From Phallusia mammillata (lineage: Eukaryota): 64,000 bases of DNA. Positions 59,240-64,000 of the stretch are shown here, one piece after another. The notes below the pieces were generated by a model. The model searched no databases. It saw only the letters and a list, made by a program, of their open reading frames with translations, and was not told the DNA's origin. Each line of letters begins with the position of its first letter. Position 1 is the stretch's first letter. A program made the translations under genes and the position numbers. Where the stretch lies: assembly GCA_965637545.1 (NCBI GenBank), contig OZ281495.1, forward strand, positions 24,056,001-24,120,000, read 5' to 3'.

Positions 59240-60618
59240 TCAATCATTCTTTTTCGACTTTTTCGCTTTCAATTTGGATATTTCCAATGCCTTATTATGC
59301 AACTGTTGCATACCAAAATCACGTTTCATATTTTCCTGAAAAAAAGAATTTTTAACTGGGTCTGAAAACAACAGAAATCTTTATGAATTTACACAAACCT
59401 CAGAAAAAACATATTTGATAAACTTTTTCTTTGGTCCAATCATCGGGCGCCAGTCAGCCATTTTACCATCCTCAAAGACAATGACAGTAGGGAGTTGGGA
59501 TGACAACGTAGATGTGCTAACACCATACCTAGAAAAATTGCAACTTGGTTGGTGTTTGTTCTGTTGTAAAGAATGTGTATTGATATGTTTATGTCCTACT
59601 CTTTGGCAGCATCAGGATATTTCCCAACGTCAACTTTTCCAAAGCGCAAGTATTCAATAGCAAATTCATTAGAGAGTGCAGAAAATGCAGGAGAAACTGC
59701 TCGGCAAGGTGGAGACCATGTGGCATGAAAAAGAACAACCCATGTCACTTTGGGATCTTCTACCAACACATCCTGCAAAGTAATTCCATAATCCTAATTT
59801 TTAACCCCAAGAGCAAGATAGTACTGGCAAAATGTTTGGAGTAGAAGCACACACCAAAAATGACAGATTGTTTAAATGCTGTAAACAATTTTTCAAATCT
59901 TACCTTGAGAGTTTTATCACTAAAATATGTGATTTCCTCAGGACCATCCTCAAAGTTTTCCGGAAACATCCACAATCGCACTATATAGAACACAAGCAAA
60001 TGAATTTCACAACTAATAAGGCATATAGATTGTTCCCCAAATAAAATTATATTAAATATCAATACATTTATCTCAACATATTGTTATAATGTGGATATAA
60101 CACAACACTCACCTAAACATAGTGCAGTGTAAATTATACAAAGTCTAACATCGAGACGATAGAAAAGAACTGCATTGGCAAGCTTTGAATACATAAGTAC
60201 TGTGGTGATCATCTGTTCCAATGATACTGCAGTTCGATTTTTCAAAACCATTAAGCACATAAAGAACATAAACATCTCAACTTCTCTCTGAAATAGTAAA
60301 CAAAACGGCTCATGTCAAGTTGGACTAAATTAACAAAGTTTTAGGGTTTTGCATTTAATCATGTATAAATGAAGAATGTTTTTACATTTGTAATCGCTAA
60401 AGTTTATTGCATCAGCTACTGCAGAAAATACAACATACCCAGTCAAAGGTGCACAATTCATCTTGCTCTGAAGGAAGGTATGAACACATCGGCCAAACTT
60501 TTCGCACAAATACAAACATGATGCTTAGTAGAAGACTTGATATTAGTCCCGGTGTAAGTGATTTCTTCCATGATTTGGAGTTTTTCAGAAAAAGCAGCAA
60601 GGGCGTTATAATTGCCAT
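59240..60618 (-). CDS. TMX2: Thioredoxin-related transmembrane protein 2, 276 aa. Exons 60439-60618, 60113-60287, 59904-59980, 59600-59772, 59399-59528, 59240-59335.
   Basis: FVRKVWPMC..LP...CTFDWREVE, LKNRTAVSLEQ, SKLANAVLFYRLDVR, GPEEITYFSDKT, TWVVLFHATWSPPC, FGKVDVGKY, QLPTVIVF and a C-terminal KKND ER-retrieval signal. 831 nt. Confidence 0.95.
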
Positions 60619-61720
60619 TGGAGAGTCCTATTTATCACAACCCTTATTCCTTGAACCTATTGCAACGTCTTTCACTACAATCTACAAATAACACCCTTAA
60701 TATACAAATAACAAGATGTTTATGCCATTGCCAGCAAGAAGCACGTAAAACTGCCATTAAAAACAATCTGTTACTATAATACGCAATCGCCTTTATACAT
60801 AATCATCAACTTAATACTAATGAACACAGGCTAAATCGCAACAATCGCATGCAAAAAATGCCAAAAATAAACTGCAGTTGAATTGATAACGAAAAATAAC
60901 TTGGCTGTTTAAACGACCCCACCATGTCTGAACTAATACATGATTAACCGAGTCATGAAAAACTAAAGATAATCTTATTAGCACGCGAATAAACCTTTCA
61001 CAGCGGCTGCTGTCCCAATTAGCACAGTCGCATTTTATTCACAGCGAAATTTGCCCAATGGCCGGCATGAAAATTATTCATGCGAATCAATGAAAAGTGC
61101 TGATTTCTATTTTATACGTTTCAATAAACCTAAAAAAGTATAATATTTGGCTATTCTTTGATTGAGCCAATTTAAAGCATTTCAGTTGGGTAATTTTTAC
61201 ATTAGGATTTACAAAATATAATTTATAAGAATGTCCAAAAGCACCTCGGTTTCGAAACATTTAGCTTCTTCAGCTTTTAGGTAGAAAAGTAGGTATAAGC
61301 CTAGGTTTGTTAACGTTTACAAAACTTAATTTTCTGCAGACCATGCGACTTCTGAAACACGGGGTGTATGGAATTAAGTGGAGTTGTCGTCCAAATTGGA
61401 ACTACCCATTGTGTTGTGATTGTTAACATGCAATTATACAAAAATAAACTAGGTTTGATGAATTGCCAGGCTATTCATTACTCAGCAAAACCTTGTTGCA
61501 AGTCATGCTCGAACAGTAACGTTGGAATCTACCTGCGAATCTTCAGTTTCTTTGATACTGACCCGACTTGCTCCATTGGGCCGAGACACAAGAACCTTAC
61601 GCAGCACAAATTTTTGCCCGTGAGTTTCGGGAAAAAAGGATAGTCTTTGTGACACAGCAGAAAGTCTGTTACGTTTCCTTTCGCAAACTGGTTGACGAAC
61701 ATACACATTTTTTATACATC

Positions 61721-64000
61721 ATGGAAAACAACGTGACATCAAAAGATGAAGGAAAGAAGAATAAGAAGTGCAATAAATCGCTTCTGCAAAGATACAGAGA
61801 AGCTACGTATGAGGAGATTTTTAACAAAGTGTTGGTCCCAATATTGTGTGAATTCTGTGCCACGTTGCTACACACTTTCTACGGTTCTATGATCTCGCCA
61901 CCAACATCACCAATTGTACACGCTTCAATAAACAGGTATGATATTAATTAATAAAGGCGTATGACGTGTGTTTGTGCAAAGCGTGTTTTGTTTTTCGTAA
62001 ATTGCCATCGGGCTGCAATCTTGTTTTCTTTTGCAGAACAATACTACCTGGAGAAAATGCAGCAGATTACGTTGTTAGTGCCCTAATGCCCGCCTTGCAA
62101 GCTGGTTTTGCTGTATGGATGATCATTGTTGTCTTCATCAAAATCACGTAAGTTATGTCTTTATTGCGCGTAATTCGATTTACATTGACACTACAGGTTT
62201 TTTGACCATATTTCTACAGAGTGATTCAATTCAACCCGGTAATGTCGTTTTCGTTCATGTTAGTGGGTCTGCTCTCGCCATATATGTTCATACCGTACGT
62301 GATTGCACAACTTTTTGGATCAGCTACCGGAGCGTGGATTGCTCAGGTCTGTCCGACAGTAGGCTACACTTAGGCTAAGTTATAAATGTGTCTATTAGTA
62401 TATCCGTTTTGTTTAGTAATAAAAGCTTTCTGTAGCTTTTTAGTTGACAGCTTTTCGTTAAACAAACGAAATATTTTGATTAATTGAACGCATTTCGCGC
62501 AGTCAATCAAGGGAGATGAGCCCGGACCATTTCGAATTGCAGAAGGCCTGAACGTTGGTGCAGTGGTTGGTGCCGAAGTAATGAGCACTGGTGTAATGGT
62601 GTTTTTCGGTCTAGCTATGACATTTGACAAAAAATATGATCAGGCAACAGGTCCAATGGCAATCGGCTTTACTATATTTCAAGGAATACTGGCAGGGTAA
62701 GCGCAACGTCGTTTTTTCGGTAAATCTGTGCGCGTTTGTAAAAGTTGTAACATGTTAGCCAAGTTTATGAACGAGTGTGGCATACGCCATGCTTTTTTAA
62801 ATGTTTAAATAGCGTTACGGGAGAGCTTTAATTTAAACCTGTTGCAAAGTCAACAACGCATGGCAATCACCATAGTGATACTTAGTTCGAGTTACGAATC
62901 AACAACGGCGGACCAAAACCCCTATAGCCTACAACAAGTCTTCGTAAAAAAATGACTGCTGACTACAGCTGATATTAAGGCTGTACTGACCCTGGGGTTA
63001 GACAATTCCTACAAGGCTAAAACCGAATACTGCTTGCTTTCGTTATTTTAAATAACATGAACAAAAAACATTTTTGGCATTTTTTGCTACAACATAACAT
63101 ATGTTATAAATAAGCTATTACTGCCAGCCATAATGTTTTTACAAACGGATGGCTCTTTCAGCAGTTTTATTATAATAAGCCGACGTTAAGACGTCCCAAA
63201 CAAGACATCATCAGGGTATTGACATAAATTACAACACTGTGCTTTATATCGCCTTTATTTCGTAATGATAACTTTGTGTTGTAAGTTATGTCATTACCCT
63301 GATGAAGGTAGTCTCGTATGGGACGTCGAAACGTCGGCTTGTTTTGGTAAAAGCTACTGGAAAAGACACCTATTTGTTAATAACATGTTATGTTTCGGAA
63401 AAAAATAACTCGGTGTTAAATTGTCTTTGAAACCAAGTGTAGCTGCACAAATAAACTCAGCTATCGCACTTAGGGCGGATTAAAGTTATTTGGGCGCCTG
63501 GCTTAAACTTGGGAAAAGATCCCATGCACTCACTTTCATTTGTACAAACAATGGGGCAAAAAACTTGGGGATTGCCATCCTTGGTGATGTAGGGCCCTCC
63601 TTGTAACCCAGTCAGCATCCCCATTTATCCACCACTACCAGGGCCTAAATGCTATTTTATTGTGTGCAGGAGATGGGTAGGTTCCAGTTGCTTTAACCCA
63701 TCACGAGCATTTGGACCATCACTTGTGATTGGAGACTGGAAGCATCACTGGGTGTGGTGGGTTGGACCCGGAGCTGGTTCCCTGATTTTTACAATAGTGT
63801 ACATGTAAGTTATAATAGCAGGTCTTAACAGAGTAACTTAGCCTACATGTAAAATGCAATAAGTTTATTACGTTTAGCGACAGCTTCGCCTATAAGTAGT
63901 TTTAACACAAAGACAAATTTAAATTAGACGAGCATTTTCTTTTGCGTAGGACATTTTTTGCACCAGAGGGAAAAGCCTGGGGCGTTCGTATTCCAAACAA
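61721..64000 (+). CDS. AQP8: Aquaporin-8-like MIP channel, 3' end outside the window. Exons 61721-61935, 62037-62147, 62220-62346, 62503-62696, 63670-63804, 63950->64000.
   Basis: Phase-consistent splicing gives ILCEFCATLL, PALQAGFAV, QFNPV, PYVIAQLFG, GAEV, PMAIGF...GILAG and CFNPSRAFGP..W..HWVWWVGP. The PAL-x-x-G and (G/S)C(M/F)NP features are AQP8-like. Confidence 0.88.
63080..63405. mobile_element. Long imperfect inverted repeat resembling Penelope-like element termini, in aquaporin intron 4
   Basis: Arm 63179-63237 is the reverse complement of 63276-63338, with weaker similarity continuing to about 63080 and 63405. Both arms carry CCCTGATGA...GGGACGTC(GAAA/TTAA)CGTCGGC. Confidence 0.65.
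63297..63337 (+). ncRNA. Minimal type I hammerhead-ribozyme-like motif, probably degenerate
   Basis: CUGAUGA (63299-63305), hairpin GUCUC-guau-GGGAC, GAAA (63328-63331), then C-GUC. Stem I is only 2 bp and the stem II base is imperfect. Confidence 0.4.
63471..63637. mobile_element. Possible decayed MITE
   Basis: Weak inverted ends TAGGGCGGAT / ATCCACCACTA; no TSD found. Confidence 0.25.

What the first reader, a model, noticed from the sequence alone, without database searches (positions are those of the whole stretch)
61721..63804. AQP8-like channel with both NPA boxes altered and a plant boric-acid-channel-like filter
Loop B is NPV (62233-62241) and loop E is NPS (63695-63703); the usual SGGH before NPA1 is TVIQ. 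By positional alignment the ar/R filter is H2=Ala (PALQAGF; His in AQP8), H5=Ile, LE1=Ser, LE2=Arg, i.e. A/I/S/R. Established: Arabidopsis NIP5;1, a boric acid/arsenite channel, has NPS/NPV and A/I/G/R. A wide-pore animal AQP8 converging on this signature could carry metalloids or other bulky neutral solutes. Loop A is also extended and has an NRT sequon. Substrate is inference only.
Basis: partly seen in the sequence, partly recalled or inferred. Interest (0 to 1): 0.7.

Follow-up and report, generated by a model that had tools for sequence, protein, structure and literature searches.

The report
Sea-squirt AQP8-type channel, remodelled pore
This is a real, selection-maintained aquaporin gene from a sea-squirt-specific offshoot of the AQP8 family that has swapped the usual pore-lining residues for small non-aromatic ones, so it probably passes more than water, but what it carries is untested.

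Summary
A six-exon GT-AG gene at 61721-64000+ (C-terminus cut by the window end) encodes a MIP channel with NPV in loop B, NPS in loop E, TVIQ in place of SGGH, and an A/I/S/R filter.

It is AQP8-derived by three tests:
- its nearest non-tunicate relatives in an exhaustive search;
- a tree placing it in the AQP8 grade (100/99);
- four of its five introns shared in position and phase with an amphioxus AQP8-like gene, and none with Aqp14.

It belongs to a divergent clade whose named members are all tunicates. That clade has Ala at H2, lacks SGGH, has a long glycosylatable loop A and a short loop C. Most close relatives are A/I/G/R, the tetrad reported for AtNIP5;1. NPV and Ser at LE1 are particular to this lineage.

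A sister-species contig shows strong purifying selection (pN/pS 0.036, synonymous sites saturated) and keeps SSCFNPSR.

The metalloid reading is analogy only:
- grafting NPS/NPV/AIGR into AtNIP1;2 gave no boron transport;
- canonical AQP8s already conduct boric acid;
- fish Aqp14, which has a non-aromatic filter, is a polytransporter.

I found no RNA evidence and could not model the pore. I rate it a new variant of a known kind, of moderate interest.

The parts
61721..61935 (+). Exon 1: start codon, cytoplasmic N-terminus, TM1 and the first part of the extended loop A. N71 of the NRT sequon is at 61931-61933.
   Evidence: for the model. The exon is collinear with tunicate homologues from residue ~18. 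The intron position and phase are identical in Clavelina P0001.
62037..62147 (+). Exon 2: rest of loop A (predicted beta-hairpin) and TM2. The ar/R H2 residue Ala94 is at 62101-62103, in PALQAGF.
   Evidence: A91 and G95 are nearly invariant anchors in the 56-sequence alignment.
62220..62346 (+). Exon 3: loop B, half-helix HB and TM3. VIQ occupies 62221-62229 (T109 is split across the intron). NPV is at 62233-62241.
   Evidence: The sequence is identical in the contigs of DNA runs X1 and X2. The intron before it is shared with amphioxus and fish AQP8.
62503..62696 (+). Exon 4: short loop C, TM4, loop D and TM5. The ar/R H5 residue Ile213 is at 62686-62688.
   Evidence: The sister-species contig L001 is 94% identical in protein but only 76% in DNA over this exon.
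63670..63804 (+). Exon 5: loop E, half-helix HE and TM6. LE1 Ser222 is at 63686-63688, NPS at 63695-63703 and LE2 Arg228 at 63704-63706.
   Evidence: SSCFNPSR is conserved in sister contig L001. A synonymous A>G difference lies at 63721.
63950..64000 (+). Exon 6, start only: the cytoplasmic C-terminus (FFAPEGKAWGVRIPN...), cut by the window end.
   Evidence: Relatives continue about 20-30 residues further.
63079..63406 (.). MITE-like nested inverted repeat inside intron 4. It is not part of the protein and explains why this intron is long.
   Evidence: Inverted repeats. Contig word depth here is 20-70 times the flanks in X1 and X2. The sister species' intron 4 is 303 nt against 973 nt here.

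Best explanation
An intact, functional gene for a MIP channel of AQP8-type ancestry. It belongs to a divergent clade whose named members are all tunicates.

Shown:
- The clade replaced the AQP8 filter histidine on helix 2 with alanine.
- It replaced the loop-B S-G-G-H with bulky residues (C/T-V-I-N/Q).
- It lengthened loop A into a hairpin that carries a glycosylation sequon, and it shortened loop C.
- This lineage further changed NPA to NPV in loop B, glycine to serine at LE1, and carries NPS in loop E.
- Arg at LE2 and both Asn-Pro pairs are kept.
- The protein is under strong purifying selection.

Inferred:
- The protein still forms a proton-excluding pore for neutral solutes.
- Because the constriction is small and non-aromatic (A/I/S/R), it is wider and less selective than AQP8's H/I/G/R.
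- It therefore acts as a secretory-pathway or plasma-membrane channel for water plus small neutral solutes (ammonia, urea, H2O2, possibly glycerol or boric acid). This is functionally nearer to fish Aqp14 or plant NIP-II than to a water-selective aquaporin.

The actual substrate is not established.
For: It is a MIP with a confident fold:
- Pfam E 3.7e-28.
- The AF2 model has pLDDT 90.6, with six TM helices and two half-helices.
- The best fold match is the ammonia-permeable AtTIP2;1, followed by AQP1, AQP0, AQP2 and AQP4.

It has AQP8 ancestry:
- In the exhaustive profile search only 10 cluster representatives reach E<=1e-30. The named non-tunicate proteins among the next hits that I labelled are mostly AQP8 or AQP8-like, from amphioxus, Haliotis, Polypterus and a bird.
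- In the ML tree the AQP8 grade has support 100/99, the presumed tunicate clade 99/91, and the classical grade including Aqp14 is separate at 97/96.
- Introns at residues 109 (phase 2), 151 (phase 0), 216 (phase 2) and 261 (phase 2) are shared with amphioxus AQP8-like. Three are shared with a fish Aqp8. None of the four Aqp14 introns is shared.

The pore features are clade-wide: Ala at H2, Ile/Val at H5, Arg at LE2, and no SGGH.

It is under selection. Over 123 codons against sister contig L001, pS is 0.79, pN is 0.028 and pN/pS is 0.036, with the exon boundaries conserved.

Functional precedents for small non-aromatic filters:
- NIP-II channels have Ala at H2, described as giving a broader constriction (PMC9208765).
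Against: - There is no transcript evidence for this species. The runs that hold the locus are DNA, and the possible RNA runs cover only the intronic repeat.
- No pore radius could be computed, because model coordinates are not exposed.
- Filter residues alone predict substrates poorly. The NPS/NPV/AIGR quintuple mutant of AtNIP1;2 carried no boron.
- Loop-B carbonyls normally line the pore. Replacing SGG with beta-branched residues could narrow or close the cytoplasmic half.
- The extended loop A could cap the vestibule.
- Conservation of NPV in the sister species could not be checked, because L001 starts after it.
Confidence: 0.55

Rival explanations
1. The protein is a NIP5;1-like, water-poor channel specialised for metalloids (boric acid, arsenite, silicic acid), reached by convergence.
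For: - The filter is A/I/S/R here and A/I/G/R in most close relatives, identical to AtNIP5;1.
- NPS and NPV boxes are both present.
- The sea squirts named among its relatives live in seawater, which contains about 0.4 mM boric acid (PMC10040401).
Against: - The box order is reversed relative to NIP5;1.
- Transplanting NPS/NPV/AIGR into AtNIP1;2 gave no boron transport.
- Human AQP8 and Takifugu Aqp8bb, with ordinary His filters, already carry boric acid. The altered filter is therefore not needed for that function.
- Aqp14, whose Astyanax sequence aligns as A/I/G/R here, is reported as a general polytransporter rather than a metalloid channel.
Confidence: 0.15
2. The protein is functionally an ordinary AQP8-type channel (water, ammonia, H2O2, urea). 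The motif changes are tolerated drift in a fast-evolving tunicate lineage.
For: - NPV, NPS and NPP variants occur in working teleost Aqp8 paralogues (PMC13163493). Examples seen here are fish P0130 with NPV and P0028 with NPS.
- The second box varies freely across the clade: NPA, NPS, NAA, NIA, NVS, NVA and SPS.
- The window protein has a long terminal branch of 0.74.
Against: - His to Ala at H2 and the loss of SGGH hold throughout the close relatives (subclade A), with Ser or Thr at H2 only in two deeper members. The lineage-specific residues in exons 4-5 are held by strong purifying selection. That is not drift.
- The H2 His is conserved in the vertebrate AQP8, Aqp8aa and Aqp8ba channels surveyed.
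Confidence: 0.22
3. The protein has an impaired or non-channel role, like the unorthodox AQP11/12 or a junctional protein. The remodelled loop B and the NPV pack the pore shut.
For: - Four of the nine clade-conserved loop B/HB positions are changed in this protein (Fisher p 0.027).
- The loop-B glycines are lost.
- The extracellular hairpin is large.
Against: Both Asn-Pro pairs, the LE2 Arg, the helix-packing glycines and the AQP-type TM6 WW motif are kept. The AF2 model keeps the canonical half-helix geometry at high confidence.
Confidence: 0.06
4. The locus is a pseudogene, or the gene model is wrong.
For: No RNA evidence was obtained. The terminal branch is long.
Against: - The reading frame is open across six exons with canonical splice sites.
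- The exon structure is identical to the annotated Clavelina gene.
- pN/pS is 0.036.
- The only exonic difference from the species' own DNA contigs is synonymous.
Confidence: 0.02

Closest known systems
AQP8-type aquaporins (aquaammoniaporins; vertebrate AQP8/Aqp8aa-bb, amphioxus and mollusc AQP8-like)
   Same: - It falls in the same phylogenetic grade.
- Four intron positions and phases are shared.
- The PAL-x-x-G motif on TM2, Ile at H5 and Arg at LE2 are kept.
- Its relatives in Ciona, Styela and Clavelina are auto-named 'aquaporin-8-like'.
- NPV and NPS variants also occur in fish Aqp8 paralogues.
   Different: - H2 is Ala, not the conserved His.
- Loop B has TVIQ (CVIN in the clade) instead of SGGH.
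- Loop A is about 15-20 residues longer and carries a conserved sequon.
- Loop C, which the Aqp14 paper says supplies a fifth filter residue in AQP8 and TIP2;1, is about 5-15 residues shorter.
Plant NIP-II boric acid channels (AtNIP5;1: NPS/NPV, A/I/G/R)
   Same: Both have a small non-aromatic filter with Ala at H2, Ile at H5 and Arg at LE2. The clade relatives are exactly A/I/G/R. Both have one NPS and one NPV box.
   Different: - There is no close relationship (NIP2;1 structures at E about 2e-5).
- The boxes are in the opposite order.
- LE1 is Ser here.
- The signature is not sufficient for boron transport in a NIP-I background.
Vertebrate Aqp14 polytransporter
   Same: It is an animal MIP with non-aromatic constriction residues. 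Astyanax Aqp14 aligns as A/I/G/R. [quoted passage not shown]
   Different: Aqp14 sits in the classical AQP4-related grade, shares none of its four introns, and keeps an SGAQ loop B and NPA/NPA boxes.
AtTIP2;1 (PDB 5i32)
   Same: It is the top Foldseek match to the model, with target-normalised TM-score 0.83. It is the plant ammonia channel.
   Different: Sequence identity is 27%. TIP2;1 has His at H2, which this protein lacks.

Membership tests
MIP / aquaporin superfamily (PF00230) | Profile match above the curated cut-off | tested here: met
   99.3 bits against a cut-off of 25, E 3.7e-28.
MIP / aquaporin superfamily (PF00230) | Six TM helices plus two re-entrant half-helices | tested here: met
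   AF2 model at pLDDT 90.6 with the expected helices. 128 PDB matches at E<=0.001; all 50 listed are aquaporins.
MIP / aquaporin superfamily (PF00230) | Two Asn-Pro-x boxes and Arg after the second | tested here: met
   N114-P115-V116 and N225-P226-S227-R228. Only the third position departs from NPA.
AQP8-type grade | Phylogenetic placement with named AQP8 / AQP8-like proteins | tested here: met
   A 41-row clade with support 100/99, separate from the classical grade. The named hits nearest in the exhaustive search are mostly AQP8-like.
AQP8-type grade | AQP8-type intron positions and phases | tested here: met
   Four of five introns are shared with amphioxus P0131 and three with fish P0028. 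None of the four Aqp14 introns is shared.
AQP8-type grade | ar/R filter H-(I/V)-(A/G/T)-R with His on TM2 | tested here: not met
   The filter is A94/I213/S222/R228. The canonical pattern is taken from PMC13163493.
AQP8-type grade | Loop B S-G-G-H before NPA | tested here: not met
   TVIQF here and CVINF or SVVHF in the clade, against SGGHF in the AQP8s.
AQP8-type grade | Permeability to water, ammonia, H2O2 and urea | not testable with these tools
   Needs oocyte, yeast or liposome assays.
Plant NIP-II (NIP5;1-like) | Membership of the NIP lineage | tested here: not met
   NIP2;1 structures match at E about 2e-5 against 7e-21 for AQP1. The protein lies in the animal AQP8 grade. No NIP was included in the tree.
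Plant NIP-II (NIP5;1-like) | A-(I/V)-(G/A)-R filter | tested here: inconclusive
   Three of the four positions match. LE1 is Ser here. Clade relatives P0001-P0005 and P0007 are exactly AIGR.
Plant NIP-II (NIP5;1-like) | Boric acid / metalloid transport | not testable with these tools
   Needs uptake assays. The literature shows the signature alone is not sufficient.
Aqp14 | Placement in the AQP4-related classical grade and Aqp14 gene structure | tested here: not met
Aquaglyceroporins (GLP) | Asp after the loop-E Arg (NPARD) and non-aromatic TM6 positions (own knowledge, Froger positions) | tested here: not met
   The sequence reads NPSRAFGP and HWVWWVGP.

The most novel reading that the evidence does not exclude
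Tunicates as a group may have given up the canonical AQP8 histidine filter. Every tunicate-clade AQP8-type sequence recovered here has A, T, S, D or N at H2, and some even lack the LE2 arginine.

On this reading the window's lineage evolved, under strong constraint, a dedicated low-water channel for a bulky neutral solute. Candidates are boric acid, arsenite, silicic acid, urea or glycerol, or a tunicate-specific metabolite. That would be a chordate counterpart of plant NIP-II reached by convergence.
Probability: 0.15. Interest if true: 0.7.

Novelty: new variant of a known kind. Interest (0 to 1): 0.45.

Why it matters
Aquaporin substrate selectivity is usually read from the ar/R tetrad and the NPA boxes. 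Here a chordate AQP8 lineage has independently arrived at the tetrad of plant boric-acid channels. It has also rebuilt loop B, loop A and loop C, all under purifying selection.

This is a natural experiment on which of these elements set selectivity. It is directly testable in oocytes with a handful of reversion mutants.

It also suggests that sea squirts have no ordinary AQP8 filter at all. That bears on how they handle ammonia, peroxide and seawater boric acid.

I found no functional study of these tunicate channels in the searchable literature. "Aquaporin 8" appears there only as a marker or differentially expressed gene in Ciona and Styela.

Tried and rejected
- **RNA evidence.** The one run search found only two holders, both of which carry the introns as well, so they are DNA. 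The four runs laid gave no spliced joints. The 'RNA?' runs touched only the intronic repeat. Expression and splicing in this species remain unshown.
- **NPV in the sister species.** Contig L001 begins 15 codons before the end of exon 3 and so misses the motif. A word search with the exon-3 peptide found nothing.
- **Second MIP copy in the window.** A weak tblastn hit on the minus strand at 60207-60657 was checked with a six-frame profile scan and is not significant (E 3.5-5.7).
- **Synteny with Clavelina P0001.** Its neighbours are ATP-synt_E and a reelin-repeat gene. The scan's notes describe different neighbours here. This does not settle orthology against paralogy.
- **Earlier scan notes.** None mention aquaporins in this genome.
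- **Pore-radius modelling** was not possible, because the tools return a model id and no coordinates.
- **Pseudogene and mis-splicing readings** were rejected.
- **Relationship to Aqp14**, which shares the AIGR tetrad, was rejected.
- **Species.** It was not identified. Run and organism names were coded.

Full report
**1. What is in the sequence**

Reading 61400-64000 and assembling the exons gives a plus-strand gene with six exons: 61721-61935, 62037-62147, 62220-62346, 62503-62696, 63670-63804 and 63950-64000+. Every intron is GT-AG. The window yields 277 residues, and the window end cuts the C-terminal tail.

The protein matches Pfam MIP at 99.3 bits, E 3.7e-28.
- NPV at 62233-62241.
- NPS at 63695-63703.
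- T-V-I-Q-F before the first Asn, where other MIPs have S-G-G-H-F.
- An N71-R72-T73 sequon in loop A.

A six-frame profile scan finds no other MIP in the window.

**2. Filter assignment**

HMMER alignments to AQP1 structures pair A94 with the Phe of the LAFG motif (Phe56 by human AQP1 numbering, from my own knowledge), I213 with the H5 His, S222 with the LE1 Cys, and R228 with the LE2 Arg.

The method returns HIAR or HIGR for named AQP8s and FH(C/S/T/A)R for classical aquaporins. The A/I/S/R reading for this protein is therefore sound. No other sequence in the set is AISR.

**3. It is one member of a tunicate clade**

The word-indexed search found relatives at 43-58% identity, all of them tunicate where named: Clavelina, Ciona ('aquaporin-8-like isoform X2', 'aquaporin-like') and Styela ('aquaporin-8-like'). 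Everything else is at 31% identity or less.

The profile search and the exhaustive 1.84-billion-protein search agree. Only 10 cluster representatives reach E<=1e-30. Scores then fall from 240 bits to a continuum at about 125 bits and below.

Several features hold throughout the close relatives (subclade A):
- H2 is Ala, in the motif PA(F/L)QAG. Two deeper members have Ser or Thr.
- H5 is Ile or Val, and LE2 is Arg.
- Loop B reads K-I-C-V-I-N-F-N-P-A (or S-V-V-H-F), never SGGH.
- Loop A is about 30 residues and always carries a sequon. Loop C is short, at 19 residues against 23-36.

LE1 is Gly in most members. The Ciona, Styela and Clavelina orthologue group is therefore A/I/G/R, the tetrad of AtNIP5;1.

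The second box is highly variable: NPA, NPS, NAA, NIA, NVS, NVA, SPS and NPT. The first box is NPA in every clade relative examined. NPV is unique to the window's lineage.

The window protein differs at 15 of about 100 clade-conserved columns. Four of those fall in the nine conserved columns of loop B/HB (W106I, C109T, A116V, I117M; Fisher p 0.027).

**4. Ancestry**

Three tests agree that the gene is AQP8-derived.

- *Nearest relatives.* I labelled the best non-clade hits of the exhaustive search. They are amphioxus AQP8 / AQP8-like, Haliotis 'aquaporin 8.2', Polypterus and Siganus Aqp8-like, a bird AQP8, and one Aqp14.
- *Tree.* A 62-row ML tree (LG+C20+F+G4) puts the tunicate sequences inside the AQP8 grade (100/99). 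They lie in a 26-row, presumably all-tunicate clade (99/91). The classical grade, including Astyanax Aqp14 and a Mytilus AIGR protein, is separate (97/96). The window protein sits in a 10-row clade (99/93) on a long terminal branch of 0.74, against 0.13-0.4 for its neighbours.
- *Gene structure.* The five introns fall at residues 72 (phase 2), 109 (2), 151 (0), 216 (2) and 261 (2). This is exactly as in the annotated Clavelina gene. The last four are shared in position and phase with amphioxus AQP8-like, and three with a fish Aqp8. Aqp14's four phase-0 introns are all elsewhere.

The A/I/G/R of Aqp14 and of the Mytilus protein is therefore convergent. So is the resemblance to NIPs, whose structures match only at E about 2e-5.

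**5. The gene is maintained by selection**

One hit of the exhaustive search, P0193 (76 aa), is 94% identical to exon 4. Its source contig is L001, 1178 nt, from Logan run DRR090687. It carries the last 15 codons of exon 3, then exon 4 and exon 5, with AG/GT boundaries at the same places.

Over 123 codons, pS is 0.79 (saturated) and pN is 0.028, so pN/pS is 0.036. Third codon positions are 46% identical against 96% for first and second positions. SSCFNPSRAFGPSLVIGDWKHHWVWWVGPGAGSL is unchanged. NPS, Ser at LE1 and the VGPG reversion are therefore old and constrained in this lineage.

Within the species, contigs of two DNA runs are identical at both motifs. The only exonic difference is a synonymous A>G at 63721. 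Five single-base differences and one 2-bp deletion lie in introns.

**6. Structure**

An AF2 model built on a 56-sequence alignment has pLDDT 90.6 and pTM 0.88. It shows the canonical helices and a beta-hairpin (65-67, 72-74) in loop A bearing the sequon.

The best Foldseek match is the ammonia-permeable AtTIP2;1 (5i32). AQP1, AQP0, AQP2 and AQP4 follow.

Coordinates are not exposed, so no pore radius could be computed. Widening of the filter is inferred only from replacing His with Ala.

**7. What the literature says about the functional inference**

- AtNIP5;1 is NPS/NPV with AIGR, and Ala at H2 is held to broaden the NIP-II constriction. But an AtNIP1;2 quintuple mutant carrying NPS/NPV/AIGR transported no boron (PMC9208765).
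- Human AQP8 and Takifugu Aqp8bb already act as boric acid channels (PMC10040401).
- NPV, NPS and NPP in the first box are documented in teleost Aqp8 paralogues, while His at H2 stays conserved. [quoted passage not shown]
- 'Aquaporin 8' is used as a marker of Ciona brain-vesicle ependymal cells and as a tail-regression gene in Styela. I could not tell which paralogue is meant.
- I found no description of the tunicate filter and no assay of these channels.

**8. Verdict**

The altered pore is largely a property of a tunicate clade, not a singular event. This lineage added NPV and Ser at LE1.

The most likely function is a glycosylated plasma-membrane or secretory-pathway channel for water and several small neutral solutes. 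A metalloid specialisation is possible but has no specific support.

No RNA evidence was obtained. The species was not identified, because run and organism names were coded.

Noticed in passing
P0141 (Clavelina 'aquaporin-8-like'), P0142, P0155, P0133; not in the window: The sister group of the clade has still stranger pores. The filters are D/I/A/L, D/I/G/I or N/I/G/L, so the ar/R arginine is missing. The boxes are NFA/NPI, NSA/NPS and NFA/NPT. MIPs without the LE2 Arg are rare and may deserve their own look.
   Followed up: partly
P0022-P0027 (unnamed JGI/Logan proteins, subclade B of the tunicate clade): The second box is SPS, and the LE2 Arg is replaced by Asn or Phe (ISPSNAFGP, ISPSFAIG). 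Loop B here reads GAAHF or GKAHF.
   Followed up: partly
window 63079-63406 (intron 4): A MITE-like element with three nested inverted-repeat pairs. Contig word depth in the species' DNA runs is 20-70 times that of the flanks, and many contigs break there. The sister species' intron 4 is 303 nt against 973 nt here.
   Followed up: partly
L003 (Branchiostoma floridae CM022898.1, 17.19-17.25 Mb): Amphioxus has a tandem array of three MIP genes. UniProt entry C3YWG6 (P0138), whose gene-model number lies two away from that of the canonical H/I/A/R AQP8-like P0131, has a T/I/G/R filter and NPV in loop B. Diversification of the AQP8 filter by tandem duplication therefore also occurs outside tunicates.
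   Followed up: partly
P0144 (Mytilus 'aquaporin-like') and P0135 (Astyanax Aqp14): Both align as A/I/G/R but fall in the classical grade. The NIP5;1-type tetrad has thus arisen at least three times among the animal MIPs sampled.
   Followed up: partly
P0189 cluster (ENA metagenome contigs, 155 aa fragments): The loop B reads DICVIQFNPCVT, so it has the same V-I-Q-F as the window protein but with NPC. The origin is unknown, and it could be another tunicate lineage with an altered first box.
   Followed up: no
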